NCBI RefSeq assembly: GCF_006345805.1
Contig: NC_043004.1
Coordinates: 100,874,001 to 100,938,000 of the forward strand
Direction: 5' to 3'
Origin: Octopus sinensis
Taxonomy: Eukaryota
Length of the DNA stretch: 64,000 nucleotides
This document shows, piece after piece, positions 1,463 through 60,775 of the stretch; within the stretch, counting starts at the first letter, position 1; every line of letters begins with the position of its first letter. Both the position numbers and the translations under genes were made by a program. Below the pieces are notes generated by a model. The model searched no databases. It saw only the letters and a list, made by a program, of their open reading frames with translations, and was not told where the DNA came from.

Positions 1463-2940
1463 ATGTTACAGCAACAAATGCTACAAATAATGAAGTTGAT
1501 AATAAAACCGGAAAATACATTTTCGCCAGATTATGAAGCAAATTCAATAATTAGATTTAAATATGATCCAGAAGAAGGAGCCACCTTTGAGGCATGTTAC
1601 CGAAGTTTTGAACAAATTTTCGAAGAAGAATGGCAAAATGAAAACGCATCTAATTCTGAGGGGACTGGCGACGATAGATCATGAGAAATACTGTAACTTT
1701 ATATTGCCTAAAAATGTTTTTTCAGTGATAAAATATCGTTATTCAACACACGTTGGAAGTGCTTAAGCATTGAGAAAAGCGATGAAGAAGATTTTTACCA
1801 CATATGCGGATAGAGTGAACAGAAAGTGCGCGAGATTTAAGATAGATAAACTAACTCCAGACTAGTTCAAGTGCCTGATTTTTGTTCAGGAACTTACTGT
1901 TAAAAAGGACTCAGAAGTCAGAACGTAAATTCTAGCAAAGCTGGAAATGAGCGAAGATATAACTCTTGAGAAACTGTCAGAAGAATGCGATATGATATTA
2001 AAAGTATGGCACGACACAGAAGAAATCCTACGCAGAGATTGTTTTCAGATAAAACTAATGTAGAAGATTGGGAAGACGGGTAAAATGTTTCACAAAAAAC
2101 ACGATACACAACAAGAGATAGACAATATACATGTATCCTTTCATAAAACAAAATGTTTTCGTTGTGGGAACACAGGACATATTAAATCGCACTGCAGAAC
2201 TAAGATGACGAAAAGTTGGACCAAACGAGAAAAATAAATATTTTGTCACAATCAAAAAAAGTTTGTACAACGAACAGAAAATTCACCAAAGTGAGAATCG
2301 AAACCACTAGTGTCAAAATACAATTAAACACGGAGTGTGACATCACTATCATAAATGAAGAAACATGGTGACAAATCGGTAAGCTGAAATTATTCAAATC
2401 AAATAAAGTAGCATATGGTGTTACAGGAAAGAAATTATATTTCACCGGCGAATGTATTTGCAATTGCAACTTTTCGATGTGAAACGAAAACGATAATCAT
2501 TTATGTATTGAAAACGCCACTAAACATATTGGGCACAGAATACACAGAGTTATTTAAAATGTGGGATATACCCCCCCCCCACCACCACCATTAGTATTTT
2601 TTGTGAAACGTAGTCGTTACAGTCAAAAGTTCGAATGAAGTTGAACAACTGAGACAAAAAAATTTTTAAATTGTTTCCAAATATTTTTTTGAAAGGATTA
2701 GGCTGTTGAACTAAAACAAAAGACAACACCTGTTTTTTTAGGCCCAAATGGAACGTTTGCGGCGTTAGACCATCTCAATAAAGATCTGGGAAGACTAGAA
2801 AGTCTAGATATAATTGAAAAGGTCGACCATTCAGACAGGGCAGCTCCGACGGTTTATGTAAAAAAAAAAATGAATAAACTAAGATGTGTGCGAACTTTTC
2901 AAACCGGACTAAATGACTGTTTAGTCGAAACACAATTATC
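1463..2940 (+). pseudogene. Decayed Gypsy gag-protease-partial RT (K02A2.6-like), 3'-truncated at a (TA)n tract
   Basis: Gag FKYDPEEGATFEACYRSFEQIF...HEKYCNFILPK. CCHC knuckle CFRCGNTGHIKSHC at 2154-2195. Protease remnant QLNTECDITIINEETW (DTG motif lost). RT start PVFFRPK...LGRLESLDIIEKVDHSDRAAPTVYVKKK...TGLNDCL. Many stops and frameshifts. Confidence 0.88.
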
Positions 2941-2966
2941 CACATATATATATATATATATATATT

Positions 2967-4766: not shown

Positions 4767-5323
4767 TCATCATCATCATTGTTCGACCGTAGTCGAGACA
4801 ATGGAATTTACCATGCTACGCCAGACTTCACGGTCCATCATGGCATTACGGAGGTCATGTTGCTGGATGCCTGTATCCCTGGAGATTACATCAGGGTAGG
4901 AGAGTGTGCACCCTCTGGTATTGCGAGTAGATGGCTTCCAGAGGAGAAGAGTAGAAATTACCTCTTTTTTAAGCTCTACAACAATGTCCAGCAAACTGGA
5001 CTCTCCTACCTTTTACAAGAGATGACACGGGTGGTAGTTTCCCATATATTTGCATTTTGGTTGGATGGCGCTTCCACGAGAGATTTTGAGCTCTCATAAG
5101 GAGGCGAGTGTAGGTTCCATCCAACCGCCTCTCAAGCTTCTTTGATAACGTCCAGGTTTCTGAGCCATATTGTAGTATTGGTTCGACTGTGGCTTTGAAG
5201 ATTTCAAGTTTGAAGTCTCTACTTAGATTTGATAACCAGATCTTATGCATGTCATTATAGGCTGATCAGGCCATACCCTTTCTAGTTAGAAAATCTTTTC
5301 CACATGATGATATGTATGACCCA
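4767..5323 (-). mobile_element. 5'-truncated RTE-like LINE (RT C-terminus plus (TGA)n tail) with a 14-bp TSD
   Basis: Peptides KLEIFKATVEPILQYGSETWTLSKKLERRLDGTYTRLLMRAQNLSWK and LRNAMMDREVWRSMV. (CAT)n tail at 4767-4779. TAGCAATATATACA at 4753-4766 and 5324-5337. Confidence 0.9.
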
Positions 5324-5882: not shown

Positions 5883-6317
5883 TACTCTTTACTCTTTTAC
5901 TCTTTTAATTGTTTCAGTCATTTGACTGCGGCCATGCTGGAGCACCGCTTTTAGTCGAGCAAATCGACCCCGGGACTTTATTCTTTGTAAGCCCAGTACT
6001 TATTCTATCGGTCTCTTTTGCCGAACCGCTAAGTGACGGGGACGTAAACACACCAGCATCGGTTGTCAAGCAATGCTAGAGGGACAAACACCGACACACA
6101 AACACACACACACACACACACTATATAATATATATATATATATATATTAATCATATATCGACAGGTCTTTTCAGTTTCCGTCTACCAATCCACTCACAAG
6201 GCATTGGTCGGCCCGGGCTATAGCAGAAGACCTTGCCCAGATGCCACGCAGTGGGCTTGAACCCGGAACCATGTGGCTGGTTAGCAAGCTACTTACCACA
6301 CAGCCACTCCTGCGCCT
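5883..6317 (-). mobile_element. tRNA-derived SINE, family A (full length)
   Basis: Head AGGCGCAGGAGTGGCTGTGTGG...GGTTCAAGCCC (A/B boxes), CORE-like CTGGGCAAG segment, internal (TA)/(TG) tract, (AAAGAGT)n tail. Many homologous copies in the window. Confidence 0.9.
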
Positions 6318-14833: not shown

Positions 14834-15420
14834 CTTTTCTATTCTAGGTACAAGGCTCGAAATTTTTGGGGAGCGGGGACCAGTCGATTAGATCGACCCC
14901 GGTACGCAACAGGTAATTAATTTATCGACACCGAAAGGATGAAAGGCAAAGTGAACCTCGACGGAATTTGAACTCAGAACGTAACGGCAGATGAAATACC
15001 TATTTCTTTACTACCCACAAGGGGCTAAACACAGAGGGGACAAACAAAGACAGACAAACGGATTAAGTCGATTACATCGACCCCAGTGCATAACTGGTAC
15101 TAATTTAATCGACCCCGAAAGAATGAAAGGCAAAGTCGACCTCGGCGAATTTGAACTCAGAACGTAGCGGCCGACGAAATACTATTTCTTTACTATCACA
15201 AGGGGCTAAACACAGAGGGGACAAACAAGGACAGAAATAGTATTAAGTCGATTACATCGACCCCAGTGCGTAACTGGCACTTAACTTATCAACCCCGAAA
15301 GGATGAAAGGCAAAGTCGACCTCGGCGGAATTTGAACTCAGAACGTAACGGCAGACGAAATACGGCTACGCATTTCGCCCGGCGTGCTAACGTTTCTGCC
15401 AGCTCGCCGCCCCCAAGTTT
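14834..15420 (-). mobile_element. Nin-domain-type SINE trimer
   Basis: Three copies of CTTTGCCTTTCATCCTTTCGGGGTCGATAAA but only one head. Candidate TSD GATAATATT at 14825-14833 and 15421-15429. Confidence 0.85.
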
Positions 15421-16019: not shown

Positions 16020-16432
16020 GGAGGAGCAGGAGTGGCTGTGTGGTAAGTAGCTTGCTAACCAGCCACATGGTCCCGGGTTCAGTCCCACTGCGTGGCATCT
16101 TGGGCAAGGGTCTTCTGCTATAGCCCCGGGCCGACCAATGCCTTGTGAGTGGATTTGGTAGACGGAAACTGAAAGAAGCCTGTCGTATATATGTATATAT
16201 ATACGTGTGTGTGTATGTGTTTGTGTGTCTGTGTTTGTCCCCCTAGCATTGCTTGACAACCGATGCTGGTGTGTTTACGTCCCCCGTCACTTAGCGGTTC
16301 GGCAAAATAGACCGATAGAATAAGTACTGGGCTTACAAAGAATAAGTCCCGGGGTCGATTTGTTCGACTAAAGGCGGTGCTCCAGCATGGCCGCAGGCAA
16401 ATGACTGAAACAAGTAAAAGAGTAAAGAGTAA
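16020..16432 (+). mobile_element. SINE family A (full length)
   Basis: Reverse complement of the 5883-6317 type, ends AAAAGAGTAAAGAGT. Confidence 0.9.
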
Positions 16433-19002: not shown

Positions 19003-19966
19003 ATGTATATATGCTTGTATGTATGTAACGTTATTATATATATATATATGTGTGTAACATAATTATATAATAGAAATATGTGTATACAGCGTTTATATAT
19101 ATATATATATGTATATATATGTGTATATATATACATGTATATACACATATTTCCATATTATACACATATATATATGTGTAAACATACCATATACATATAA
19201 AATATATATATAGTATATATATATTATATACCTATATATACATATATATATATATTATACATATATATTCTAGATACAATATTATATATAACATATATAT
19301 ATATACATACATATATATATTTACATATACATATATATGCATATATATACATACATATATATCAATAAGATTCATATGAACTCCATAGATTACAGTCTAA
19401 CTCTTACAAACGAAGTATTATTCATTGAAAATGCTCGACTTTTCCTAATAAATAATTATAAATTATCATTATAAATAGGGCTACACCATAAATCTAATGC
19501 GAAGGAATAAAACGGAATATTTTAGTCTCAGCTTTACGAATAAGAGATGTTTGTATTTTCGTCTTACAGTTCTCTTCCTCAGCAATTATAATTGCTTCTC
19601 TAACATTTCCAGTCCACAGGCGGTGGAGGAAAAGCAATATTTGTAATAGCAAACGAATTTATACAGTCAGTCACGTGGGATAAATGCAAGTCCGACTGAG
19701 GCAGTCAGGTGAGTGAAAGGACCCGGTTTATGTGTAACTCTGTTGGATATAAACTTTCGATTCTTTCTATCAAAGTAGCCAATATCTCATAAAGTGGTGA
19801 ATATATTTACAATAAATAACATATTGGGTTATTTCGGTGAGTTATATAACTTTACTTACAAATCTTACTCACTATGTCCTATATACTTACAGATTGGTCA
19901 TAGGCACATCAGAAGGGCATTTGTAAGGTACGAGAAGCACCTTGCTTCAGTAGATTTTTTTTTCTC

Positions 19967-20082
19967 TACGGCCATATCACGTTGAAAGCACCGGTTCTCG
20001 TCTGATCACCGAAGTTAAGCAACGTCGAGCCTAGTCAGTACTTAGATGGGTGACCGCTTGGAAACCTAGGTGCCGTAAGCAT
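19967..20082 (+). pseudogene. 5S rRNA: 5S rRNA retrocopy (near full length, first ~3 nt missing or mutated)
   Basis: TACGGCCATATCACGTTGAAAGCACCGGTTCTCGTCTGATCACCGAAGTTAAGCAACGTCGAGCCTAGTCAGTACTTAGATGGGTGACCGCTTGGAAACCTAGGTGCCGTAAGC follows the metazoan 5S pattern. Helix I TACGGC/GCCGTA can pair. No oligo-T terminator follows. Confidence 0.92.
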
Positions 20083-20216
20083 AGCAGACCGATAGAATAA
20101 GTACTGGGCTTACAAAGAATAAGTCCCGGGGTCGATGTGCTCGACTAAACGGTGGTGCACCAGCATAGCCACGGTCAAATGACTGAAACAAGTAAAAGAG
20201 TAAAAGAGTAAAAGAG
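20083..20216 (+). mobile_element. 3' part of SINE family A fused directly to the 5S copy
   Basis: GACCGATAGAATAAGTACTGGGCTTACAAAGAATAAGTCCCGGGGTCGAT...AAAAGAGTAAAAGAG, near-identical to 16310-16430. Confidence 0.9.
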
Positions 20217-21179
20217 AACAAGTAAGAAAATCCATAAGAAATCACTCGACTTGCAAGAAATAACCGTCAATTATCCTTCACATCATTTCCTGCCCTCTCC
20301 GGAGAAGGAATGTAAATACTGGATAATGCATTTACTACACAGCCCTATGGTCATGGATGATCACGCCTTTTGATCATAGCTCTGGATTTAAACGACTACA
20401 TCAGCCACATCTCATGCATAATTGTATCACGTTGCATATGCACACTCACAAACATGTACACCTTTCAATGCGGGCGTTGGGCTTAGGTTGGGGGGGGTGT
20501 GCTTATTGTCACCTTTCCCTTTTGATGAGTTTTATTTATGAACTGAATTGACATGCGCAAACATTGTGGATATCGCATCGCAATTAGTAAGCCTAGGATC
20601 GGTCTACGTAGAATTAGTAGTCTGATATTTGCAGGCTACGGGGTTCTAATTGGCTCATAATGGACCTCCAGCATACACTGACCGAACAGGTTCGCTACCC
20701 AGTACTGCAAGGTAGGAGTCATGTTTTATAAATTCCTCGTGAGAATTATACAAGTTGGTGAATGATCTGTATGTATCGCAATTTATGCGTATATGCAAAA
20801 TCGTTAGTTGCATATGTCTGTGTATCATTCAGTGTGTGTGTTTGAGTATACCAAGTGTATGTTAATTTGTGTAGGTGTGTTTTTGAATACTTGCATGAGT
20901 GTGACAGCATTCATATGTCGTAGCTCTTTCAATGTATATGCTTTGCTTTGTTTTTCTTTGTATTTGTGTATGCCTGTGCTTGCTAACTAAAACGTACAAG
21001 TATCATATGTTCCTCTAATATTATCTGCTTTCGGCTATGCATGTATCTACAAACATACACACACACACATATATATATGTACTATATACTATATATACAT
21101 ACATACATACATATATACATATACATAAACACGTAAATACATATACATAACTATATATATATGTATATACATATCTATT

Positions 21180-24879: not shown

Positions 24880-25046
24880 CTGTTATAGTTGTTGCTGCTG
24901 CTGTTGCTGCTGATGCTGATGCAGTCCATTTTTCTTTTGATTTATATATTACTCTTTCTTTTGTGTTTATTCTATTTTTGTTACTATTATTGTTATCGCT
25001 GTTCTTGTTGTTGTTGCTATTATTATCATTATTATTATTATTATTA

Positions 25047-25080
<34 letters not shown>

Positions 25081-25265
25081 CATTATTATTATTATTATTA
25101 TTATCATTATTATCATTATTATTGTTATTATCATTATTATTACTATTATTATTATCATTATTATTACTATTATTATTATTATTATTATTATTATCATTAT
25201 TATTATTATCATTATTATCATTATTATTGTTATTATCATTATCATTATTATTGTTATTATTATCA

Positions 25266-25332
<67 letters not shown>

Positions 25333-26170
25333 GTTTGATGTTTTTATCTTTCTAATGTCTGCTTTCGTTTTACAATTTTTTTCCTTCATTTCTTCTAGTT
25401 AACGCCGTTATTACTATTAGTAACGTCGTTGTTGTTGTTATTGTTGTTGTTATTGTTATTATTATTATTATTATTATTATTGGTAATGATGATGATGATG
25501 ATGGTGACGAGGAGGAGGAGGAGGAGGAGGAGAATGAGGAAGACGAAGATGAGGAGGAAAATTATGAAGATATCTTTGATAATTTTTGGCAAATATTTTT
25601 AAGGAGCAGGAACGAATCTTATTTGAAAATTTTTTATCAAAAGCACCTTATTAGAAATGCTAGGGTGAAACGGTTGCATTGATAATGGTGGTGCTGGTGG
25701 TACTGGTGGTGGTGGTGACGGTGAGGGTGGTAGTGGTGGTGGTGGTGCTGGTGGTGCTGGTGCTGGTGGTTCTGGTGGTGCTGGTGGTGCTGGTGGTGCT
25801 GGTAGTGACGGTGGTAGTGGTGGTGGTAGCGGCGGTAGTGATGGTAGTGATTGTTGTTGTTGTTGTGGTGGTGGTGGTGGTGCTGCTGCTGCTGTTGCTG
25901 CTGGTGGCGGCGGTAGTGACGGTTGTGGTGGTGGTGGTGGTGGTGGTGGCGGTGGTAGCGGTGGAAACGGCGATGTCTTTAGTAAAAGATTATGGCTATA
26001 GTGATGCACGATGTAGTTGAGATTGTGCCGGCGGTAGCTGAAGGTGAACATGGCCACGAATGATGTTGATGGTAGTAGTGACAGTAGTGGTAGCATTAGT
26101 GTCGGTGGCAGTATAGTGCCGACGGTTGATGGGTTGAAGGGTTGTTGTTGTTGTTGCTTTTGTCGTTTAG
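24880..26170. repeat. Compound trinucleotide microsatellite field: (TAT)n, (TTG)n, (GAG)n, (GGT)n
   Basis: Direct inspection. It generates poly-Y/L/I/V/P ORFs. Confidence 0.95.
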
Positions 26171-26606
26171 CCAACAGTTAGCGCTCACTAAACAGATCCA
26201 ATGTGTTCCTTAGCAACCATCCTCTCATATCTAAGAGTACCTAGGACTAAAAATAGCCAAGTCACTTCCCTTATTTAAGACATGACGGTTTGATCTGCCG
26301 AAGATCCACTAGTCTGTCGCAACACGATGTTATCCAACGGCGCATCATCGCCTCTCCTGGTGCCGCCCACCTTCAAATCTGCATTCGCCTCGTATTTATT
26401 AAGAACGGTGCCAACAACCTCCACCTGCAAGATGTCCCACACTGTCACAGTGATACCGACCGGAAAGGCCCACACGGTCCATCCGCGTCGCGGTGTCAAA
26501 GGGATGCCTTTCTATGGTTCTATCTTCCGCAGTAGGGAGTCGAGAGTTTGCACAACAGCAACAACAGCAGTAGCAACAGTAATTGCTGCTGCTACTGCTA
26601 CTACTG

Positions 26607-26642
<36 letters not shown>

Positions 26643-26719
26643 TCACTACAACCACCTCCGGTAGTAGTGGTGGTGGTGGTGGTGGTAGTAGTGGCGGCAG
26701 CAGCAGCAGCAGCAGTAGC

Positions 26720-26760
<41 letters not shown>

Positions 26761-27397
26761 AGAAATGAATTCACGTGTAAGCACAAATATCATGCACATT
26801 TGATTAATTAGACCCCATTGCTTTCTGCCGCATATTTTATCGATTCCACCTCCCTGATCTTCACAACTGATTTCAGATAACAGCAAGATTCCTACCGCAT
26901 CTGATTGCAGCCGCTCAACATAATTCCATGGACCGAGAACCGGCGTACACTGAACGAATACGTATCCAAACAGTTTCGCCATTTTCTCAGTATTTCGGTC
27001 ACGTCCGGCTGAATGTATTAACATATCTGACCATCTCGTAGTCACTGCTAAGCCAAGGATATTTGTCAATTATCAATAATCCCTGCTTCAAGAGCCCCCT
27101 TCAAAAAGCCGCACACTGCACATCCTCTTCAACGTCCAGAGTGTCCCCAGGTCATTGTCCCTCATATTCTTCGTTAATCCTTTCTAAAATGCAAGGGTGG
27201 ATATTTTAGGGACCGCAATTGTTCATCAACAGAGGTCTGTAAGCGTCATTTATGGAAACACATGCCTGACAATGAGCAACCAAACCTATATATTCCAAGA
27301 CGTGATCCTTTATTCCGATCACGAAACAGATCCTGTCGGTGGTTACAGCAATCTAGATTTTTAAAATTAAACTGAAAAATTGCACTTCAAAAAATAC

Positions 27398-27735
27398 AGC
27401 CTAGGCCCGGCTGTGTCATAAGAAGTTTTTTTCCCAACCTTTGGTTCCGGGTTCAGTCGCAGTGTGTGGCACCCTGAGCAAGTATCATCTACTGTAGCTT
27501 CGAGTCGACCAAATCCTTCTCAGTGGATTTGGTGGAGAGAAACTGAAAGAAGCTCGTCCTATGTGTACGTGTGTTTACGTCCCCGTAATTTAGCAGTTCG
27601 GCAAATGAGACCGATCGAATAAGTACGTATCAAACTTAAAAGAGTAAGTACTACCAACCATGTTTTCAACTAAACCCTTCATGGTCGTTCCTCAGCATGG
27701 CAACAATCCAATGACTAAAACAAGCAAAAGAGTAG
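27398..27735 (+). mobile_element. SINE family A, diverged copy
   Basis: GGTTCCGGGTTCAGTC head and body collinear with 16020-16432. Confidence 0.75.
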
Positions 27736-28038
27736 AAACCACAATAAGACAGCATCATTTCCGGTTACTCAGTCCTGGTCATATCTAAATGCGTGCACAG
27801 ACAGGATTAAATCGGTTGAGTAATATCTCGACACAGCCAAGTTATATACAATATGAAACGAATACACAATATCACAAAGACCTTACTACATTATTTTGAG
27901 GCATGGTTTCTAACTGAAAAAGCCAATTAAACCAAATTCTTAGATATAATTCTCGAGGACTGGGACGAAAATCTGCCTTTGATATATGTCTCGGACCCAG
28001 CTGACCAAAAAATGTGTCCGAGAGGAGGCAAAGAAGCA

Positions 28039-29552: not shown

Positions 29553-29929
29553 TGCTTAACATAACTCATTAATTTTGCTACTATACAAAGGAAAAACAAA
29601 TCTTGCTTAAGTCTTTTCTTCTTTGTTTTTTTCTTTTTCCATTTGAATAATATCCTCCGGAGTATTTTTAACTAATTGCCAAACTTCACGAAAAGAGAAT
29701 AAAATATTTATTGATCGAAAACGACACGAACGAGAAGAAGAAGATGAAGAAGAAGAAGAAAAAAATGTTGTAATAAAGATAAAGAAATGCTAAAATAGAA
29801 CTCAATAGTTTAGAAAAAAAAATAGATGAAATATAAAACAAATTCTTTGCTGATTTTTCTGTATAAACTTCTTGTGTTAAAAACAAAATTTCTTCAGAAA
29901 ATGTTTTGGGATACGTTGTTTAGTTTCAT

Positions 29930-29984
29930 TATCATAGTCATCACCACCACCACCATCTTCATTATCATCATCATCATCATCATC

Positions 29985-30018
<34 letters not shown>

Positions 30019-30044
30019 CCATCGTCATCATCGTCATCATCACG

Positions 30045-30096
<52 letters not shown>

Positions 30097-30247
30097 CACA
30101 TCACCATCGTCATCATCATCATCATCATCATCATCCTCACCATCACCATCGTCATCATCATCATCATCGTCATCATCGTCATCATCCTCACCATCATCAC
30201 CATCTTCATCATCATCATCATCATCATCATCACCACCATCACCACCA

Positions 30248-30301
<54 letters not shown>

Positions 30302-30303
30302 CG

Positions 30304-30357
<54 letters not shown>

Positions 30358-30540
30358 GCGTTATCAACAGTAGCAGTATATTCATAATCTTTGCCACCAC
30401 ACACCGGCGCAAATCATCATTATCTGACTTTCAGTTCCATCACCTTCATCATCAAAGTTGTCACCGCCGTCGTCGTCGTCGTCGTCGTCACCATCATCAC
30501 CATCACCATCGCTATCAGCAGCAGCAGCGGCCCCAGTAAC
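29930..30540. repeat. (CAT)n/(CAC)n/(CGT)n microsatellite
   Basis: Direct inspection. Confidence 0.95.
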
Positions 30541-30554
30541 AGCAGTACCAGCAG

Positions 30555-31052
30555 CTTAGTCCACTTTGAACTTTTAAACCCAAACCAAACGATGACAAAG
30601 GTGATCTACTGCAAGCAGCTTGAGCGGCTTAAATGAGCACTTGAAGAAAAAACAACCATCTTTGGTTTCAAGACGAAAGGTGTGCTTCCATGAAGATAAT
30701 GCCCGGCCACATACAGCGAGGATAACATTTCAAAGGCTGAAGCAGTTTGAATAGGAAACGCTGTCTCACCCACCGTATTCGCCGGACATTTACCCATCTG
30801 ATTATCATTTATTCTACAGTCTTCAAAATCATTCGAACGGAAAAAATATGAATTCTGTAGACAAGGTCAGAACAGTACTGGAGGAGTATTTTTCGTCATG
30901 GACAAGTGAATTTTGGAAGAAAGATCTTGCAAGTCTACCAAATAGCATTGCAGAAAATGAAGGAGAGTATATTTTCGATAAAAAAAAAAAAGAACTTAAT
31001 CTTAAATATAAAAGAAGTATGAAAAAAATACATTATTCATGGTTTGACCCAA
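30555..31052 (+). mobile_element. mariner transposase 3' half plus probable right end (decayed)
   Basis: LVHFELLNPNQT...YCKQLERL...CFHEDNARPHTA...HPPYSPDIYPSDYHLFYSLQNH. Ends ...GACCCAA|TA. Confidence 0.85.
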
Positions 31053-31058
31053 TATATA

Positions 31059-31857
31059 CAGGGTGCGATATGTAAGTTGCTGCCATTTTATACTTTTAAT
31101 TTCGCGCACGCGCATTGTTTGTTTTTGATTTCGTCGACTACACAGTATAGTAGGGTCAGTTGGGCACCGTCTGTGAAAAAAACAGCACGATGATGCAATT
31201 CACTCTGCTAAACATTTGAAAACGACATGCTGCACTGCTTGGTATTCGCGCCGGAAATTTCAATACGAACATTTCGAGAGTTTGGGTGTCAATCTGAGGA
31301 CAGTGCAATACGAGGACAATAAGAGAGAGTGATAAAACTCAGACAACTCGTCATCATCATGGTGTTTGGAATGATCACTTTATGGCTCCATTCATCTTCC
31401 CACACGGCCTCTCACTCAACACGTAGGTTTACATCAAGTGCCCGGAGGAGATAGTACTGCCCTGGGTCAAGAGGATGGCTGCACCATGTCACGCACGCAG
31501 GAGAACCCCTAACATCTGGCCACCTAACTCCCCAGGCTGCAACACACTTTAAAATGTGTGGGGCGCAGTTGAGCGAGAGAACAACAAAACTCCTTGTAAC
31601 ATCAAGCTGGACTGAAGGCAAGGATTATGGCAGCATTCATTAATTTAAACAAGGAGACCGTCCAGAAGAGTTGCTGGAGATTCCAAAGTCGTCTGGAGTC
31701 CGTGGTTGAAGCCAATGACGATTTTATTGAATAAATTTACTCTTTAGTATTTCAAGATATCTTTATGTAATTTTGATAAATATAGCTCTTAAAATGAGAT
31801 GTCAGTGTTATCTTCATTTTTGCGTAATTTAGACAATAGTTTATTCACCGCACCCTG
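31059..31857 (+). mobile_element. Internally deleted Tc1/mariner-superfamily element, maT/DD37D-like
   Basis: TA|CAGGGTGCG...CGCACCCTG|TA. Remnants VMVFGMIT, WPPNSP, VWGAVERE, KARIMAAFINLNKETVQKSCWRFQSRLESVVEANDDFIE. Subfamily assignment is inference. Confidence 0.8.
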
Positions 31858-32302: not shown

Positions 32303-33485
32303 CAGGGTTTGGACAAAATAATGGAAACACCTAGTACCATAGTATCATAATTTTGAAATATCTATAAAACTGTCAAAAGCTTGTTTAATCTTATGCTTTT
32401 TTTATTTATTAATAGTGTTGCTTAATATGTTTTGCTAAAATCGCAGTTTCTTTTCAGATATCATCGGGAAAAAGTAATTAAAATTCATTAAAATGACAGA
32501 TCTATCGGTCTTTCAAAAAGGTCAAATTGTTGATGCTAGTATGGCAGGCGCTAGCGTAAGGAAACAGCCGAAATGTCTGGTGTATCAAGAAGTGCTGTCC
32601 TTTGAGAAAGAAGGAAAAAAACCTCCTCGTCGAAACAAAACTCCAGAAGAAAACCACAATTTTCAGATGGGGACCGTCGGACAATTTCACGAATTGTTAG
32701 AAAGGATCACAAAAGTACAGATCCCAAAAATTACTGCAGAGCTTAATGACCACCTGGGGAACCCAGTTTCTACAAAGACTGTTCGCCGGAAGCCGCACAA
32801 AACCGGATTTCACGGATGGGTTGCAATCAGAAAACCACAACTTTCAAAACCAAACGTTTGAATGCATTTAGAGTGGAGTAAAAACCTACAGAATTGGTCC
32901 CTAGATCAGTGGAAGAATGTTATTTTCTGGGACGAGTCATCCTTTACCTTATTTCCGACCACCGGCCAAGTATACGTGTGGAGACAGCCAAAAGAAGCAT
33001 TTGACCCAGACTGCCTTCTTTCAACTGCTAAACATGGAGGAGCATCTGTGATCTGGGGACCATATCTTGGAAATCCGCTGGCCCTTCACGGCAGAATTAA
33101 TGGTCAAGACTATTTAAGCATTTTATTTGATCAAATTTATCCTATGGTTTCCGGAGGAAAATGCAATCTGTCAGGATGATAATGTACCAATTCACACCAC
33201 TAAAGTTGTTAATGAATGGCACGAAGAACATTCTAGTGAAGTTGAACATCTTATCTGGCCACCACAGTCCCCAGATCTCAATATCATTGAACATTTATGG
33301 TACATTTTAGAAAAACAAGTAAGGAGTCGATATCCTCCACCATCATCACTACAAGAACTGGTGATTGTTTTAGCTGAAGAATGGACAAAAATTCCTTTCG
33401 AAATAATTCAAACTTCGTACGAGTCCATATTAAAATAAATTTGTTTGAAATTTTAAGGTGTTTCCATTATTTTGTCCATCCCCTG
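32303..33485 (+). mobile_element. Full-length decayed Tc1-like transposon with DD36E spacing (Incomer-like)
   Basis: TA TSD. 30-bp TIR CAGGG(TT/GA)TGGACAAAATAATGGAAACACCT. Transposase 32493-33438 in frameshifted pieces: VIFWDESSF, QDDNVPIH, WPPQSPDLNIIEHLW. 36 residues counted between D (33178) and E (33289). Confidence 0.9.
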
Positions 33486-33829: not shown

Positions 33830-34020
33830 GGCACAAGGCCAGCACGTTCTGGAGGTAAGTCGATTACGTCTACCCCAGTATTCAGCTGGTACTTAAGTTA
33901 TCGACCAAGAAAGGACGAAAGGCAAAGTCGACCTCGTTTAAACTCAGAACATGAAGTCGAATGAAATGCCGCTGAGCATTTAGCCCGGCTAGCTAACGAT
34001 TCTGCTAGCTCACCGCTTTA
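33830..34020 (-). mobile_element. Nin-type SINE, diverged
   Basis: AAAGGCAAAGTCGACCTC...AACTCAGAAC motif and head remnant. Confidence 0.75.
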
Positions 34021-37707: not shown

Positions 37708-38385
37708 GCATATGATATTACATAAAATAAATATAATACTCACACATAAATAAGTACGCATCCACCCACCCACCCCACCACTACATCCAGCTAACGTATT
37801 CACACACCACATCTTCATAAAAATAAAAATAAAAAAACTCTCAAAGAAAATCTTGAAGATAATAAAAGAAGATTACCCGTTTCCTTTTCGTCTCTTTGTT
37901 TTTACGTGAAACAAATAATAACGAAAGCTAAAGGAAACACGTTTTTATTTATTCCTATTAACTTGTTGTCTGTTTTACGTCTTTTTATCATTGTTATATT
38001 CCATTTCTTTGTTGTTTTACTTAAACCATAATTGAAAAGTATATTAATGAATTTATCTCACTTTATTCTTCTTATTCTTAATGTATTATCATTTCTTTTG
38101 TCGCTATTATTATTGTTTGTTCTTGTCTCAGAAAGAAGTGGTGGGGCAGCGATCAGAGTGGAGTTGCAATAACAATAACAAAAATAACAACAAACATTGA
38201 TAATTCTGCTTTACTTTGATAGTTTTTAGTTTCATGCTTACACTCTGCGTTCGAATTCTGCTGGGATTGGGTTTGTTTATCATTCCTCCGGTTTCGATAT
38301 AATATATTCTAGTATAATATCAGGCTAATTGTGTGCGGTTCGTTTGAATAGTGAGCTTCCAAAACATCGAAGTCTTGCTTATACC

Positions 38386-38806
38386 TATTTCTTTACTACC
38401 CACAAGGGACTAAACACAGAGAGGACAAACAAGGACAGACAAACAGATTAAGTCGATTATATCGACCCCAGTGCGTAACTGGTACTTATTTAATCGACCC
38501 CGAAAGGATGAAAGGCAAAGCTGACATCGGCGGAATTTGAACTCAGAACGTAACGGCAGACGAAATACCTATTTCTTTACTACCCACAACGGGCTACACA
38601 CAGAGGGAACGAACAACGACAGACAAACGGATTAAGTCGATTATATTGACTCCAGTCCGTAACTGGTACTTATTTAATCGACCCTGAAAGGATGAAAGGC
38701 AAAGTCGACCTCGGCGGAATTTGAACTCAGAACGTAGCGGCAGACGAAATACCGCTAAGCATATCGTCCGGCGTGCTAACGCTTCTGCCAGCTCGCCGCC
38801 TTCAAA
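38386..38806 (-). mobile_element. Nin-type SINE dimer with a 13-bp TSD
   Basis: Two bodies, one head. TCTTGCTTATACC at 38373-38385 and 38807-38819. Confidence 0.9.
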
Positions 38807-39169: not shown

Positions 39170-39600
39170 TTTGTTTGGATGGGGACAATCAATCACATCG
39201 GCTACAGTACGCAACTGGTACTTAATTTATCGACCCCGAAATGATGAAAGGCAAAAGAAAAGGTCGACTTTGCCTTTCATTCTTTCGTACTATTTGAGAA
39301 CTGGGGTCGATGTAATCGATTTCCCCCCAACCAACCACCCACTCACTCCACAAAAATCCAGGCCTTGTGCCTGTGGAAGAAATGATTATTCATCTCAAAA
39401 TAAGGCGGCGAACTGGCAGGATTTTTAGCACGCTTGGTAAAATGCTTAGCAACATTTCGTCCGTCTTTACGTTCGGAGTTCAATTTCCGCTAAGATCGAC
39501 TTTGCCTTTTATCCTTCAAGGTTGATAAAATAAGCATCAATTGAGTACGGGGATCAATCTAATCGACTCACACCTTCGCCTGAAACTGCTGGCCTTGTAT
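39170..39600. mobile_element. Cluster of Nin-type SINE fragments in both orientations
   Basis: Minus fragment about 39170-39255, plus fragment about 39260-39370, plus copy with head about 39400-39600. Confidence 0.65.
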
Positions 39601-40304: not shown

Positions 40305-40764
40305 CAGAAGCAGAAGCAGCAGTAGTAGTAGTAGTAGTTGTAGCAGCAGCAGCAGCGGCAGCATTGAAAGGTGGTGAACTGGTTGAATCTTTACTGCACC
40401 GGACAAAATGCTTAGCGGCATTTCTTCCGACTCCTTACGTTCTGGGATCAAATTTCAGCGACGTCGACTTTGCTTTTCATCCTTTTATGGTGGATAAAAT
40501 AAGTACCTGTTGAACACTGGCGACAACAGAAGCAACTCTTACACGATCCCAAACACTGCAGTCTGATCATGCAGCAGGGAGCTGTACAAGAATAAGCCTT
40601 CCCATTAAATGTATCTGGGAGAATTTTATAAAATCCAACAGCATATTTTTGTCACAGGATATAATCCAGGAGAGAGTAAAGAGGAAAATTCAACATCTCT
40701 GTCTACGAAAACACGGAAGCAGATTAAATTTTCGCATTAAATTAAGTTTATCTAGTACTGCAAC

Positions 40765-41180
40765 AAGGAGTGACTGTGTGGTAAGTAGCTTGCTAACCAA
40801 CCACATGGTTCCGGGTTCAGTCCCACTGCGTGGCATCTTGGGCAAGTGTCTTCTACTATAGCCTCGGGCCGACCAATGCCTTGTGAGTGGATTTGGTAGA
40901 CAGAAACTGAAAGAAGCCTGTCGTATATATGTATATATATATATGTATGTGTGTGCGTGTGTTTGTGTGTCTGTGTTTGTTCCCCTAGCATTGCTTGACA
41001 ACCGATGCTGGTGTGTTTACGTCCCCGTAACTTAGCGGTTCGGCAAAAAGGGACGGATAGAATAAGTACTGGGCTTACAAAAAGAATAAGTTCCGGGGTC
41101 GAGTTGCTCGACTAAAGGCGGTGCTCCAGCATGGCCGCAGTCAAATGACTGAAACAAGTAAAAGAGTAAAAGAGAGTAAA
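40765..41180 (+). mobile_element. SINE family A (full length)
   Basis: Highly similar to 16020-16432. Confidence 0.9.
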
Positions 41181-43609: not shown

Positions 43610-44123
43610 AGAGAGTTAACGATAAGTGGCTAACTCTAGTGCTAGAAATAGCTCCTTATTCTGGTATAGCCACCGAAGATTTTTTCCACAGCAGAAATAG
43701 CATTACCTCAACGTAAGGGAAGCGAAATACAACAAAAAGATAGATTAATACTGAACAATTGTTTCCTTATCAACATATATGTAATTATACTCACATATTT
43801 GTCTATAATTCATCAGCAGTATTTGTCCTCGATACAATTTATCAGACTCACACGGGCGATGAAATATTTCATCGCCCGTGTGAGTCTGATAAATTGTATC
43901 GAGGACAAATGCTGCCGATGACTTATAGACAAATATGTGAGTATAATTACATATTATGTTGATAAGGAAACAATTGTTCAATATTAATCTATCTTTTTGT
44001 TGTATTTCGCTTCCCTTACGTTGAAAGTAATGCTATTTCTGCTGTGGAAAAAATCTTCGGTGGCTATACCAGAATAAGGAGCTATTTCTAGCACTAGAGT
44101 TAGCCACTTATCGTTAACTCTCT
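43610..44123. mobile_element. 514-bp zero-spacer palindrome (foldback element), TA on both sides
   Basis: Centre CGGGCGATGAAAT|ATTTCATCGCCCG at 43865/43866. Arms of about 257 bp differ at about 7 positions. Ends TA|AGAGAG...CTCTCT|TA. Confidence 0.93.
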
Positions 44124-48247: not shown

Positions 48248-48840
48248 GTACAGCGGTGTAGAAAGGAAGATCGCAGCAACACGGTTTCGCATCCCAGTAG
48301 AATTAACTATGTCTTTTGGTTTTTTTTCTTATATTTCATTTATATTCAATTTACTTTAGTCATTGTTCTGCGCCCATGCTGGGGCTCCGTCTAAAAAGGG
48401 TTTTAGTGGAATAGATTGACACCATTCTACTTTTTTTTCATATAGTATCGTACTTATTCTGTCGGTTTCTTTTTCTGAACCGTTTGATTTGGGGGATATA
48501 AACAAACCAACAGCAGCTATTAAGCGGCGGGTGAGACGAACACGGAGAGTACAGCGGTGTAGAAAGGAAGATCGCAACAACACGGCTTCGCATCCCAGTA
48601 GAATTAACTATAAGTCTTTTGTTTTTCTTTCTTTATTTCATTTATATTCTATTTGCTTCAGTCATTGGTCTGCGCCCATGCTGGGGCTCCGTCTAGAAAG
48701 GGTTTTAGTGGAACACATTGAAACCAATCCACTTTTTTTTCATATAGTGTCGTACTTATTCTGTCGGTTTCTTTTTCTGAACCGTTTGATTTTAGGGATA
48801 TAAACAAACCAACAGCAGCTATTAAGTGGCGGGTGAGACA
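48248..48840. repeat. Tandem duplication, 301-bp period, containing an old SINE A 3' half (minus)
   Basis: GTACAGCGGTGTAGAAAGGAAGATCGC at 48248 and 48549. Units about 90% similar by eye. Confidence 0.9.
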
Positions 48841-49020
48841 AGCACAGGCGCAAGCATGCACACACAGACACACGTATGTACATATCAATGAATATGAAGA
48901 TGTGTTTACAATTTTGCGCTAGGATTCTTACGATTGACATGTATGCGGGGTCATCTTCCATAAAGTTACGCGAACACTCACACATTATTTTATTCTATTT
49001 TATTATATGATATTATATAT

Positions 49021-49375
49021 AGGCGCAGGAGTGGCTGTGTGGTAAGTAGATTGCTTACCAACCACATGGTTCCAGGTTCAGTTCCACTGTGTGGCACCAT
49101 GGGCAAGTGTCTTCTACTATAGCCCCAGGACGACCAGAGCCTTGTGAGTGGATTTGGTTGACGGAAACTGAAAGAACACCCTGTTTGTGTGTCTGTGTGT
49201 CGCTTGACAACTGATGCTGCTATTTTACGCCACCGTAAGATAGCAGTTCGGCAAAAGAGATCGATAGAATAAGTAGTAGGCTTACAAAGAATAAATCCTA
49301 GGGTCGATTTGTTCGACTAGAGGCGGTGCTCCGGTATGGCCACAGTCAAATGACGGAAAAATAAAAATGAATGAT
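49021..49375 (+). mobile_element. SINE family A
   Basis: AGGCGCAGGAGTGGCTGTGTGG head and full body. Confidence 0.85.
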
Positions 49376-50124: not shown

Positions 50125-50661
50125 TTAGGTTGTCCGGAAAGTTCGTGTCGATTTATAGTAGCTTACATTTCGACTTATTTTAGAGCATGGTTGAGTCCAT
50201 TTAGAGCACAGTTTAAGCTATCTTTTCGCGGAAGGTTTCTGTTCCTATAACCTGTGTTAATTCTGTAACCATTTAAAATGGAAGATAAGAAAGTTCATTT
50301 TCGCCACTTCATGCTTTGGGAACCAGACAAAAATTGGTACAGCTTGGCTGGGATGTGTTACCCTACCCTCCATATTCACCAGATATTGCTCCTTCGGATT
50401 TCCACTTATTCACGTCTCTGCAGAATAATCTTAATGGTAAAAATTTCAATTCCTTGGATGACGTAAAAAGATACCTTGATGAATTATTTGCCATGAAACC
50501 ACCTCAATTCTGGGAAGTGGGTATTTTCAAGTTAAAGGAAAGATGGAGACGCATTGTGCAACAAAATGGTTCATATTTGGTTGATTGAAAATGTAATGGC
50601 AACTATTTACTGACCTTTTTCTTACGTTTAAAAATCGGCACGAACTTTCCGCACAACCCAA
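50125..50661 (+). mobile_element. 537-bp internally deleted mariner with both TIRs
   Basis: TA TSD. 30-bp TIR TT(A/G)GGTTGT(C/G)CGGAAAGTTCGTG(T/C)CGATTT. N-terminus MEDKKVHFRHFMLWE joined to TRQKLVQLGWDVLPYPPYSPDIAPSDFHLF. Confidence 0.92.
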
Positions 50662-51152: not shown

Positions 51153-51724
51153 CATGCGTGCGTGCGTGCGTGTGCGTGCGTGCGTGTGCGTGCGTGCGTG
51201 TGCGTGCGTGTGCGTGCGTGCGTGCATGTGCGCACGCGTGTATGGAAGACAATGAGAGAGTCAGGGAAAGACTGATAACCAAAGAAAAAGAACAAGAACA
51301 ACAAGAAGAAGACGGGGACCCAGAAGAAGAAGAAGACGAATAATCACAAGAAAAAGAATTGCCCCGAGTACCGAACCTTACTGGTATTTTTATAAAATCC
51401 CAAAACGATCTACATCAATGTTTAACCTCGGCTACTTTGACCATTTGAACTTAAAGCTCACAACCATTCAACATTGCATCCTGTCCAAAGCTCTCCAAAT
51501 ATCTTTATAACTGGCACTCTGTATAGCTACCTTTGAATATATCCATAAATGTCCACATACACATATATGTGCATACATATATACATATACATGCAAAGCT
51601 GTACGTACTCATGCATACGTATTCAATTACTTATCCACTTATACACATATGTTAACGTATTATGTGGGTGTAGGTATGTCTGTGAATGTGTGTTTCTTTG
51701 CCTTGGTATATGATCTCTATATGA

Positions 51725-51925
51725 AGGTGGCGAGCTGGCAGAAACGTTAGCACGCCGGGCGAAATGCTTTGCGGTATTTCGTCTGCCGTTACATTCTGAG
51801 TTCAAATTCCGCTGAGGTCGACTTTGCCTTTCATCCTTTCGGGGTCGATAAATTAAGTACCAGTGAAACACTGGGGTCGATATAATCGATTTAATCCGTT
51901 TGCCTGTCCTTGTTTGTCCTCTGTC
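51725..51925 (+). mobile_element. Nin-type SINE monomer
   Basis: AAGGTGGCGAGCTGGCAGAAACGTTAGC head, Nin-like CTTTCATCCTTTCGGGGTCGATAAA. Confidence 0.85.
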
Positions 51926-52859: not shown

Positions 52860-53270
52860 TTCATATCTCTTTTACTCTTTTTACATTTACTTGTTTCAGT
52901 GATTTGACTGCGACCATGCTGGAGCACCACCTTTAGTCGAGCAAATCTACCCCATGACTTATTCTTTGTAAGCCTAGTACTTATTCTATCGGTCTCTTTT
53001 GCCGAACCGCTAAGTTACGGGGACGTAAACACACCACCATCGGTTGTCAAGCGATGTTGGGTGGACAAACACAGACACACAAACATATACACACACATAC
53101 ATATATAAATATATACGACGGGCTTCTTTTCAGGTTCCGTCTACCAAATCCACTCACACGGCTTTGGTCGGCCCGAGGCTATAGTAGAAGATACTTGTCC
53201 AAGGTGCCACGCAGTATGAATGAACCCGGAACCATGTGGTTCGTAAGCAAGCTACTTACCACTCCTGTGC
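52860..53270 (-). mobile_element. SINE family A (full length)
   Basis: Collinear with 5883-6317. Confidence 0.88.
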
Positions 53271-59936: not shown

Positions 59937-60169
59937 TATTTCTTTATTGCCCACAAGGGGCTAAACATAGAGGGGACAAACACGGACAGACAAGGGGATT
60001 AAGTCGATTACATCGACCCAGTACGTTACTGGTACTTAATTTATCGACCCCGAAAGGATGAAAGGCAAAGTCGACGTCGGCGGAATTTGAACTCAGAACA
60101 TAAAGACAGACGAAAAACTGCTAATCATTTCGCCCGGCGTGCTAACGTTTCTGTCAGTTCGCCGCCTTA
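59937..60169 (-). mobile_element. Nin-type SINE monomer with a 15-bp TSD
   Basis: AAGATGTGCATTTCT at 59922-59936 and 60170-60184. The empty site is visible in the paralogous segment near 57868-57882. Confidence 0.92.
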
Positions 60170-60775
60170 AAGATGTGCATTTCTGCCTTATTGATCTTCG
60201 TCAGTATCAAATACAAACTGGCAACCAAATGTTAATTAAAAATCTGACGTCACTAAGTGGAAAAAATTTCTGATGTTGCAATTAACAGGCCGGCAAAGTA
60301 AAATTTATTATGTAAAACAGAAGTAATATTAGATTAAAATAATTATCTCTACATCATACTCAATGCAGATACATGATGGAAAATGGAATTAACTGGATAA
60401 TTACCGTCTGCTATTTATATATTTTTATGTTACTTAACATTTTACATCTATAGGATATATCTTAATACAAGTACCATATTTAATTAGGCTATCTACGATG
60501 TATGTGCGTTAAGTATGATAAACAACTCCCCTGTTTAAATACTACTTGTGTTGCACATAACGAATTTTTATTCTACTGACCGGCTAACTGTAGCATCAAG
60601 AAAATACCGCAGTTAATAAGCTTTCCATGATGCATCCGCACACTGAGTGTAATACAGAGTTGTGTGTGTTGCGACGTACCGGCGTCCCGTCCATATGGGG
60701 AACCTACACGCCAATGAAACGAGGAAACCGGCCCTTATGAGCCAGGTATGGCTCCAGAAGGAACAAACAACAAAT

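What the first reader, a model, noticed from the sequence alone, without database searches (positions are those of the whole stretch)
19967..20216. 5S rRNA fused to a SINE 3' tail: candidate SINE3-like family or template-switch chimera
Seen: a ~116-nt 5S copy with box A (AGTTAAGCAACG) and a near-consensus box C (AGATGGGTGAC) runs, with only a few linker bases, into the last ~130 nt of SINE family A including its (AAAGAGT)n tail. There is no Pol III terminator between them. Known: 5S-headed SINEs (SINE3) exist in fish and some other animals, and LINE RTs make chimeras by template switching (e.g. U6-L1). Inference: a one-off chimera or a member of a 5S-headed SINE family. I do not know of one described for octopods and cannot check. 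No TSD found.
Basis: partly seen in the sequence, partly recalled or inferred. Interest (0 to 1): 0.72.

Follow-up and report, generated by a model that had tools for sequence, protein, structure and literature searches.

The report
5S rRNA head on SINE tail
A decayed, full-length copy of 5S ribosomal RNA is joined head-to-tail to the last ~130 bases of the commonest octopus SINE, the signature of a reverse-transcriptase template switch; it is either one copy of a little-studied 5S-headed SINE lineage or a one-off chimera, a known kind of event that I could not resolve further because no octopus genome was searchable.

Summary
Rfam finds one complete 5S rRNA match (window 19964-20081, + strand, 102.7 bits, model positions 1-120). 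It is the only one in 64 kb. After a 4-5 nt linker it runs into the last ~126 nt of a ~413-nt tRNA-headed SINE ("family A", at least 10 copies in the window), in the same orientation. There is no T4 terminator between the two parts.

It is not a working 5S gene. Three helix pairs are broken, there is no terminator, and it is a lone copy. No family A 5' sequence lies upstream, so a 5S insertion into an existing SINE is excluded. No target-site duplication (TSD) exceeds chance in any configuration.

The best reading is a single RNA-level fusion. A LINE reverse transcriptase copying SINE-A RNA switched to the 3' end of 5S rRNA. That is how SINE3-type families arise, for example HaSE3 in Helicoverpa.

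Family versus one-off could not be tested. No searchable collection holds octopus DNA except 20.8 kb of O. sinensis, which has no copy. Published repeat tables already list "SINE/5S" classes in Octopus, but no paper found describes them. Base rates therefore favour a family member (about 0.5) over a one-off chimera (about 0.3) or chance adjacency (about 0.1).

At most this is a new member of a known kind. Interest is moderate to low.

The parts
19955..19963 (+). T9 run in the 5' flank, directly upstream of the 5S head. It is not part of the element. No TATA-like box lies near -30.
19964..20081 (+). 5S rRNA-derived head, full length (118 nt). The first two bases are CT where metazoan 5S has GC/GT, which means either a 2-nt 5' truncation or mutation. 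Three helix pairs are non-canonical.
   Evidence: RF00001, 102.7 bits, model 1-120; NC line marks pairs 1/119, 3/117 and about 79/100
20013..20027 (+). Box A of the type-1 Pol III internal promoter (5S positions 50-64): AGTTAAGCAACGTCG
   Evidence: Element positions are taken from PMC6204057.
20030..20035 (+). Intermediate element (5S positions 67-72): CCTAGT. It has one G>A change relative to the CCTGGT of Xenopus (recalled from memory).
20043..20060 (+). Box C (5S positions 80-97): TAGATGGGTGACCGCTTG. The core GATGGGTGACC is intact, with transition-type changes at positions 81 and 95.
20082..20085 (+). Linker TAGC, matched neither by the 5S model nor by family A. It is either non-templated or a microhomology junction.
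20086..20190 (+). 3' body of the family A SINE (positions about 290-395 of a 413-nt copy). It lacks the tRNA head, the CORE-like region and the (TG)n stretch.
20130..20146 (+). Hairpin GGUCGA-UGUGC-UCGACU. The stem is kept in the family A tails aligned (one of 42 stem cells is non-canonical) and in the chimera. It is a candidate recognition stem-loop for the partner LINE.
   Evidence: pairs in columns 48-53 / 59-64
20191..20216 (+). Terminal 8-nt repeat (GTAAGAGA-type unit, written GTAAAAGA) x 3.2, the LINE-type microsatellite tail.
20217..20231 (+). Degenerate extra unit AACAAGTAAGAAAA, which echoes AACAAGTAAAAGA at 20187. It may be the true 3' end.
   Evidence: by eye
20368..20371 (+). First T4 run downstream. 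A Pol III transcript starting in the 5S head would read through the tail and end about here, giving roughly 405 nt.

Best explanation
The 253-268 bp unit is one retroposed DNA copy of a composite RNA. It has a 5S rRNA head, which carries the internal type-1 Pol III promoter. It also has the LINE-recognised 3' module of the dominant octopus tRNA/CORE-type SINE (family A).

How the composite arose (inferred): the reverse transcriptase of the partner LINE began on the 8-nt-repeat tail of a SINE-A RNA. It copied about 130 nt, then switched template to the 3' end of a 5S rRNA and copied that to its 5' end.

I think it most likely that this fusion became, or belongs to, a multi-copy 5S-headed SINE lineage (SINE3 type). 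In that lineage, transcripts start in the 5S head, read through the tail because there is no terminator, and are mobilised by the same LINE as family A.

This particular copy is old and decayed. It is probably transcriptionally weak and is not a 5S gene.

Shown: the anatomy, the orientation, the missing terminator, the decay, and the retained tail hairpins. Inferred: the template switch, the LINE partner, and membership of a multi-copy lineage.
For: - Anatomy: a full-length sense 5S is joined through 4-5 nt to family A positions 290-413. There is no T4 run before 20368.
- Rival order of events excluded: no family A 5' part lies upstream, so a 5S insertion into a resident SINE is ruled out.
- Not a gene: three broken helix pairs, a lone copy, and no terminator.
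- Tail module kept: the tail retains all predicted stem-loops of family A tails, and its two changes at paired positions give G-U pairs.
- Similar age of the two halves: the tail differs from the family consensus by 7.8%, against 2-12% for ordinary copies. The 5S half differs by roughly 10% from the mollusc-type 5S as I recall it.
- Distinct source lineage: the 8 tail differences are clustered. Three of them are shared with older divergent copies. So the tail comes from a lineage distinct from the young family A copies, as a separate family would.
- Precedent: HaSE3 has a 5S head plus the body and tail of the tRNA SINE HaSE1, with an RTE partner. Its authors explained it by template switching (PMC3272025).
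- Base rate: O. vulgaris annotation lists 4 'SINE 5S' families covering 9,831,953 bp, about 0.35% of the genome. That predicts about 225 bp per 64 kb, roughly one such element (PMC13282606). O. bimaculoides and O. vulgaris tables list SINE/5S and SINE/5S-Core-RTE (PMC8967140). One-off 5S chimeras number only tens per mammalian genome: 10.5% of 253, often truncated and antisense (bioRxiv 10.1101/2025.02.02.635956).
Against: - Only one copy has been seen. The junction is unique in 64 kb, and 20.8 kb of O. sinensis has none. That is expected even for a family of 10^3-10^4 copies.
- No TSD flanks the unit.
- The published 'SINE/5S' rows give no sequences. At least one of those families (7 'insertions' covering 42 kb) looks like 5S rDNA arrays. 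The 9.8 Mb could also be inflated by family A tails assigned to a 5S-headed consensus.
- Box C and the intermediate element carry changes, and no upstream TATA-like element is present. This copy shows no sign of being active.
- The partner LINE was not identified. The RTE contigs fetched (L003, L004) have unrelated 3' ends.
Confidence: 0.5

Rival explanations
1. One-off template-switch chimera. A single retrotransposition event fused cellular 5S rRNA to a 5'-truncated SINE-A RNA, in the manner of U6/L1 or 5S/L1 chimeras. The product never propagated.
For: - The anatomy is the same as in the best explanation.
- The junction is unique in everything that could be searched.
- The two halves show similar decay, consistent with one event followed by neutral drift.
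- Chimeras of small RNAs with LINE or SINE 3' ends are well documented and do not self-propagate (Buzdin et al. 2003, as cited).
- Retroposed type-1 promoters are usually silent without upstream signals (Kapitonov and Jurka, as cited in PMC3272025).
Against: - Base rate: with tens of such events per genome, the chance of meeting one in a given 64-kb window is about 10^-3 or less. Octopus annotations meanwhile report SINE/5S classes at 10^3 copies or more.
- No TSD was found. Six of 8 human 5S/L1 chimeras examined have one.
- Human 5S chimeras are mostly truncated and antisense. This one is full-length and sense.
Confidence: 0.3
2. Chance adjacency of two independent insertions. A 5'-truncated family A copy landed within a few bases of the 3' end of an older 5S retro-pseudogene, in the same orientation. 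The T-rich end of a 5S copy might have attracted it as an endonuclease target.
For: - Family A is dense: at least 10 copies in 64 kb, and several are 5'-truncated, e.g. 46177-45999 and 64000-63919.
- No TSD brackets the whole unit.
- The tail comes from a somewhat different subfamily than its neighbours.
Against: - No TSD brackets the tail alone either.
- The 5S ends at its natural 3' end, and the SINE starts 4-5 nt later in the same orientation. With about one family A boundary per 5 kb, the chance per 5S pseudogene is about 10^-3 (my estimate).
- The reverse order, a 5S insertion into a SINE, is excluded because no family A 5' part lies upstream.
Confidence: 0.1
3. A functional or variant 5S rRNA gene that happens to lie next to a SINE.
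For: The Rfam score is high at 102.7 bits, and the box A and box C cores are recognisable.
Against: - It is a single copy and not in a tandem array.
- There is no T-run terminator for 287 nt after the 5S 3' end (20081; first T4 at 20368).
- Helix I and one helix IV/V pair are broken.
- It carries transition-type changes across the 3' half.
- No upstream TATA-like element is present.
Confidence: 0.02

Closest known systems
HaSE3 of Helicoverpa armigera (lepidopteran SINE3; PMC3272025)
   Same: It has a 5S rRNA-derived head fused to the 3' part of a co-resident tRNA-derived SINE (HaSE1). The tail is shared with, and presumably recognised by, the same LINE. Its authors proposed an origin by template switch from SINE RNA to 5S rRNA. 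It has a much lower copy number than the tRNA SINE, and some copies lack TSDs.
   Different: HaSE3 keeps both the body and the tail of HaSE1 and has an identified RTE partner with a (TGA)n end. Here only the last ~126 nt are kept, the tail ends in an 8-nt repeat, and the partner LINE is unknown. HaSE3 was shown to be multi-copy (15 or more clones, several species). Here only one copy has been seen.
SINE3 of zebrafish and other 5S-derived SINEs (Kapitonov and Jurka 2003; fruit bats, springhare, Tribolium, as cited)
   Same: The plan is a 5S head carrying box A, the intermediate element and box C, followed by non-5S sequence and a LINE-type tail. There is no terminator after the head.
   Different: Zebrafish SINE3 carries a Deu domain and a CR1-like tail. 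No mollusc or cephalopod member has been characterised in the papers I could search.
Small-RNA/LINE template-switch chimeras (U6/L1, 5S/L1; Buzdin et al. 2003; bioRxiv 10.1101/2025.02.02.635956)
   Same: A small Pol III RNA is joined 5' to a 5'-truncated retroelement 3' end in a single insertion. U6/L1 chimeras have a full-length, sense small RNA, as here.
   Different: Those are L1-driven, poly(A)-tailed, usually flanked by TSDs, and do not propagate. Human 5S/L1 chimeras are mostly truncated and antisense. Here the 3' partner is a SINE with a stringent-type tail, and no TSD is visible.
AmnSINE1 / DeuSINE 5S-tRNA composite heads (Nishihara et al. 2006, cited)
   Same: The 5S sequence was acquired at the 5' end of a pre-existing tRNA SINE by template switch and took over the promoter function.
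   Different: Those retain part of the tRNA head and the Deu core. This element retains neither the tRNA head nor the CORE-like region of family A.
Family A itself: the abundant octopus tRNA-headed SINE, probably the tRNA-Core class or an OR2 relative
   Same: The last ~126 nt, the hairpins and the 8-nt repeat tail match at 88-92% identity.
   Different: The chimera has no tRNA head, no CORE-like region and no (TG)n stretch. Assigning family A to CORE/OR2 rests on my recollection of the CORE consensus and on class abundances. It was not tested here.

Membership tests
SINE3 / 5S rRNA-derived SINE | The 5' head is at least 60% identical to 5S rRNA over at least 60 nt (SINEBase criterion, PMC3531059) | tested here: met
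   RF00001, 102.7 bits, full model 1-120, window 19964-20081.
SINE3 / 5S rRNA-derived SINE | The internal type-1 Pol III promoter (box A, intermediate element, box C) is retained | tested here: inconclusive
   All three elements are present at the expected positions. The intermediate element carries one transition-type change and box C two, relative to the Xenopus and mollusc pattern, which I recalled from memory. Activity cannot be judged from sequence.
SINE3 / 5S rRNA-derived SINE | A non-5S body or tail follows the head with no Pol III terminator, and ends in a LINE-type tail | tested here: met
   family A positions 290-413, (GTAAAAGA)3, and no T4 run before 20368.
SINE3 / 5S rRNA-derived SINE | [quoted passage not shown] | not testable with these tools
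   There is one copy in 64 kb and none in 20.8 kb of O. sinensis. No searchable collection holds octopus DNA. The literature gives only class totals.
SINE3 / 5S rRNA-derived SINE | Target-site duplications flank the whole unit | tested here: not met
   the best match is 6 of 7, and 193 of 200 shuffles do as well. This is not disqualifying for old copies or for stringent-type LINEs (HaSE3.1 also lacks a TSD).
Template-switch chimeric retrocopy (U6/L1 type) | A full-length sense small RNA lies 5' of a 5'-truncated retroelement 3' end, directly joined | tested here: met
   a 4-5 nt linker.
Template-switch chimeric retrocopy (U6/L1 type) | A single insertion bracketed by one TSD | tested here: not met
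Template-switch chimeric retrocopy (U6/L1 type) | The junction is unique in the genome (no propagation) | not testable with these tools
   The junction is unique in the window. No octopus genome was available.
Functional 5S rRNA gene | Intact helices, a T-run terminator at the 3' end, and a tandem array | tested here: not met
   three non-canonical pairs; no T4 run for 287 nt after the 5S 3' end; lone copy.
Family A tRNA-headed SINE | A tRNA-derived head plus a central (CORE-like) region upstream of the shared tail | tested here: not met
   only positions 290-413 are present, and nothing of positions 1-289 lies upstream.

The most novel reading that the evidence does not exclude
This is a copy of a genuine, multi-copy 5S-headed SINE family of octopods. 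It would be the first characterised SINE3-type element in Mollusca. It was born by template switch from the dominant CORE-type SINE onto 5S rRNA, and it competes for the same LINE through an identical recognition tail. That gives a natural side-by-side comparison of type-1 and type-2 Pol III promoters driving the same retrotransposition module, in a genome where SINEs make up about 11%.
Probability: 0.45. Interest if true: 0.45.

Novelty: new member of a known kind. Interest (0 to 1): 0.33.

Why it matters
If it is a family, it extends 5S-derived SINEs to cephalopods. It would also put a sequence and an architecture behind the unexplained 'SINE/5S' rows in octopus repeat tables, which may be mis-counting family A tails or 5S rDNA.

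It would show that the octopus SINE expansion included head-swapping by template switch. The shared junction would be a useful marker for dating and for phylogeny.

If it is a one-off, it is simply another example, with a non-L1 LINE, of a well-known reverse-transcriptase side reaction.

Either way it has no bearing on 5S rRNA supply, and the mechanism is not new.

Tried and rejected
1. External copies by DNA pattern. The exact junction was scanned in metagenome contigs. The gapped pattern (box C, 20-50 nt, tail start) was scanned in metagenome contigs, genome contigs and viral contigs. All gave 0 hits. A family A 22-mer also gave 0 in genome contigs and viral contigs. These collections contain no octopus DNA, so the negatives say nothing.

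2. External copies by spurious ORFs.
- The 66-aa minus-strand ORF across the junction found no candidate.
- Exact look-ups of window ORFs found nothing.
- A concatenated six-frame translation of the SINE A and B consensus, plus O. sinensis exon and endonuclease fragments, returned only two O. bimaculoides UniRef proteins with exonised SINEs. Neither is on record for DNA retrieval.

3. Harvesting octopus DNA through Tc1 and RTE homologues. Only P0047 gave octopus sequence: L001, 20.8 kb of O. sinensis CM016861.1. L002, L003, L004 and L005 are not octopus or are too short.

4. Partner LINE. Nothing in the window or the loci outside SINE copies matches the tail. The RTE contig with a preserved 3' end (L003) ends in (ATG)n, which is unrelated. 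L004's 3' end is cut and equally unrelated.

5. TSDs in three configurations: whole unit, tail only, 5S only. None exceeds chance.

6. Weaker 5S relics at E<=1. None among the listed hits, which are dominated by microsatellite matches to miRNA models.

7. Fold of the whole unit. The z-score is -1.2, so it is not unusually structured.

8. Rejected readings: a functional 5S gene, and a 5S insertion into a resident SINE.

Full report
**What is there**

Reading 19700-20500 and scanning the whole window against Rfam shows one complete 5S rRNA match at 19964-20081 on the + strand.
- It scores 102.7 bits against a gathering score of 38, over model positions 1-120.
- It is the only 5S in 64 kb, by the gathering threshold, among the listed hits of a permissive E<=1 scan, and by blastn.

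Using the Xenopus numbering quoted in PMC6204057, the promoter elements are:
- Box A, positions 50-64: AGTTAAGCAACGTCG at 20013-20027.
- Intermediate element, positions 67-72: CCTAGT at 20030-20035.
- Box C, positions 80-97: TAGATGGGTGACCGCTTG at 20043-20060.

The copy is not a working gene.
- cmscan marks three non-canonical pairs, two at the end of helix I and one in helix IV/V.
- The first two bases are CT instead of the usual GC/GT.
- There is no T-run after the 3' end.

**The tail**

blastn of a full-length neighbouring repeat (16020-16432, 413 nt) against the window finds at least 10 copies of a tRNA-headed SINE, 'family A'.
- Full copies lie at 16020-16432, 40766-41179, 6317-5889 and 53262-52872.
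- There are several 5'-truncated or older copies.

Window 20086-20211 aligns to positions 290-413 of that element at 92% identity, and to four other copies at 87-92%.

Homology starts at AGACCGATAG. Between the last 5S base and that point lie 4-5 bases (A)TAGC that belong to neither part.

The terminal repeat is an 8-mer, (GTAAAAGA) x 3.2, not a 7-mer. A degenerate AACAAGTAAGAAAA follows it.

On the + strand the first run of four or more T after the 5S start is at 20368. A Pol III transcript that began in the head would therefore run through the whole tail.

**Ordering of events**
- No family A 5' sequence lies upstream of the 5S. A 5S retrocopy did not split a resident SINE.
- A systematic search for direct repeats was made around the whole unit, around the tail only, and around the 5S only. 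It found nothing better than 6 of 7 matches, and 193 of 200 shuffles do as well. TSDs give no information either way.
- For chance adjacency, a 5'-truncated family A copy would have to land within about 5 bp of the natural 3' end of a 5S pseudogene, in the same orientation. At the observed family A density, I estimate this at roughly 10^-3 per 5S pseudogene.

**Age and lineage of the two halves**

Against a leave-one-out consensus, the chimera's tail differs at 8 of 103 positions (7.8%). Ordinary copies differ by 2-12%.

All eight differences fall in alignment columns 55-91, and the first 54 columns are identical to the consensus. Three of the eight states recur in older, divergent copies at 27590-27750 and 48630-48780:
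- G in GATGTG.
- The extra C in CTAAAC.
- T in GGTGG.

So the tail was not copied from the young family A master that produced its neighbours. It comes from a different or older sub-lineage.

RNAalifold predicts four stem-loops in the tails, including the GGUCGA/UCGACU hairpin, whose stem is kept in the aligned tails apart from one non-canonical cell. The chimera keeps all four, and its two changes at paired positions give G-U pairs. This is compatible with a tail still under selection when it was copied, but it is not significant by itself.

The 5S half differs by about 10% from the mollusc-type 5S as I recall it. Most of these changes are transitions in the 3' half. This is a recollection, not a test.

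**Mechanism**

The architecture is a full-length sense small Pol III RNA, a few extra bases, then the 3' end of a retroelement. That is what reverse-transcriptase template switching produces. It is also the accepted origin of 5S-headed SINEs.

The closest described case is HaSE3 of Helicoverpa. It has a 5S head on the 3' part of the resident tRNA SINE HaSE1, shares an RTE-derived tail, and has a far lower copy number than HaSE1. Some copies have no TSD.

The 8-nt repeat and the conserved hairpin suggest a stringent-type partner LINE, as in the eel UnaL2/UnaSINE1 system (cited). I could not identify that LINE.

**Family or one-off?**

This is the crux, and it could not be tested directly.
- The junction is unique in the window.
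- The exact junction gave nothing in the metagenome collection. The tolerant box-C-to-tail pattern gave nothing in the metagenome, prokaryote-genome or viral collections. A 22-mer of the hugely abundant family A also gave nothing in the prokaryote-genome and viral collections. Those collections simply lack octopus DNA.
- The protein-database route to octopus assemblies yielded only one 20.8-kb stretch of O. sinensis chromosome CM016861.1 (L001). L001 carries family A-like and family B SINEs but no 5S.

The literature adds indirect evidence.
- Bonar et al. 2026 list four 'SINE 5S' consensus families covering 9,831,953 bp of O. vulgaris, about 0.35% of the genome.
- Marino et al. 2022 list SINE/5S in O. 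bimaculoides and O. vulgaris, and SINE/5S-Core-RTE in O. bimaculoides.
- A density of 0.35% predicts about 225 bp per 64-kb window, which is about one element of this size.

There are caveats.
- No sequences are shown in either paper.
- One of these families has 7 'insertions' averaging 6 kb, which looks like 5S rDNA.
- A 5S-headed consensus with a family A tail would attract family A fragments and inflate the total.

Genuine one-off 5S chimeras are rare: about 27 in a primate-scale survey, mostly truncated and antisense.

On base rates, a family member is therefore several-fold more likely than a one-off. My estimates are:
- Family member: 0.5.
- One-off chimera: 0.3.
- Chance adjacency: 0.1.
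- Functional 5S gene: 0.02.
- Remainder: other explanations.

**Comparison and novelty**

The element works like a SINE3-type SINE. It meets the structural criteria: a 5S head, promoter boxes, a non-5S LINE-type tail, and no terminator between them.

The copy-number criterion of SINEBase, at least 100 copies, is untestable here. The TSD criterion is not met.

The phenomenon is known from fish, mammals, insects and fungi. For cephalopods I found only table rows, no description.

At most this is a new member of a known kind. The mechanism is not new, and this copy looks dead. Interest is moderate to low.

Noticed in passing
window 14882-15411, 38381-38805, 51719-51924, 59937-60171 (fragments at 33856-34019, 39402-39568, 40368-40537); L001 17955-18306: A second abundant SINE, 'family B'. 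Its tRNA-like head is at the right-hand end (minus strand) and it has a 184-nt internal tandem duplication. It is 90-94% identical between the window and O. sinensis L001, so the window comes from Octopus or a close relative.
   Followed up: partly
window 43803-43928: A near-perfect palindrome. The arms are about 43 bp exact, extending to about 60 bp with mismatches, and the centre is AAATATTT. It matches plant miRNA models on both strands below threshold. It looks like a foldback or MITE-like hairpin.
   Followed up: no
window 20137-20172 (alignment A2 columns 55-91): All 8 differences between the chimera's tail and the family A consensus are clustered here, and none lies in the first 54 columns. 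Three of the states are shared with older divergent copies at 27590-27750 and 48630-48780. The tail therefore derives from a different sub-lineage than the young neighbours.
   Followed up: partly
window 32478-33176 (+): A Tc1-like transposase remnant with a single in-frame stop at 32859-32861 (Pfam HTH_Tnp_Tc3_2). The best database relatives are only 57-74% identical. A related annotated gene, LOC118762572, sits in an intron of a peptidase S28 gene in O. sinensis (L001).
   Followed up: partly
window 30755-31072 (+), 50289-50585 (+), 4972-5265 (-), 63331-63771 (-), 2702-2965 (+): ORF fragments that look by eye like mariner transposase C-termini, a LINE RT C-terminal region, an RT N-terminal region and an LTR-retroelement fragment. 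Pfam found nothing at E<=0.01, so these labels are unconfirmed.
   Followed up: partly
window 5889-6317 (-), 49004-49359 (+), 52872-53262 (-): Three family A copies are preceded by (TA)n ending in ...ATATAG directly before the head GGCGCAGGAGTGG. This suggests either a TA-repeat target preference or that the head begins a few bases earlier than in the 16020 and 40766 copies.
   Followed up: no
window 24889-26800 and 29826-30540: Long triplet and low-complexity tracts that give open frames of 150-240 codons in several frames (poly-Pro/Ala, poly-His, poly-Ile, poly-Asp). They are most likely microsatellite arrays rather than exons.
   Followed up: no
window 20191-20231: The SINE tail repeat is an 8-mer (GTAAAAGA) in the chimera, while other copies mix 8- and 7-nt units. 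After the repeats, the motif AACAAGTAA that precedes them occurs again. This is suggestive of reverse-transcriptase slippage or re-priming on the tail.
   Followed up: no
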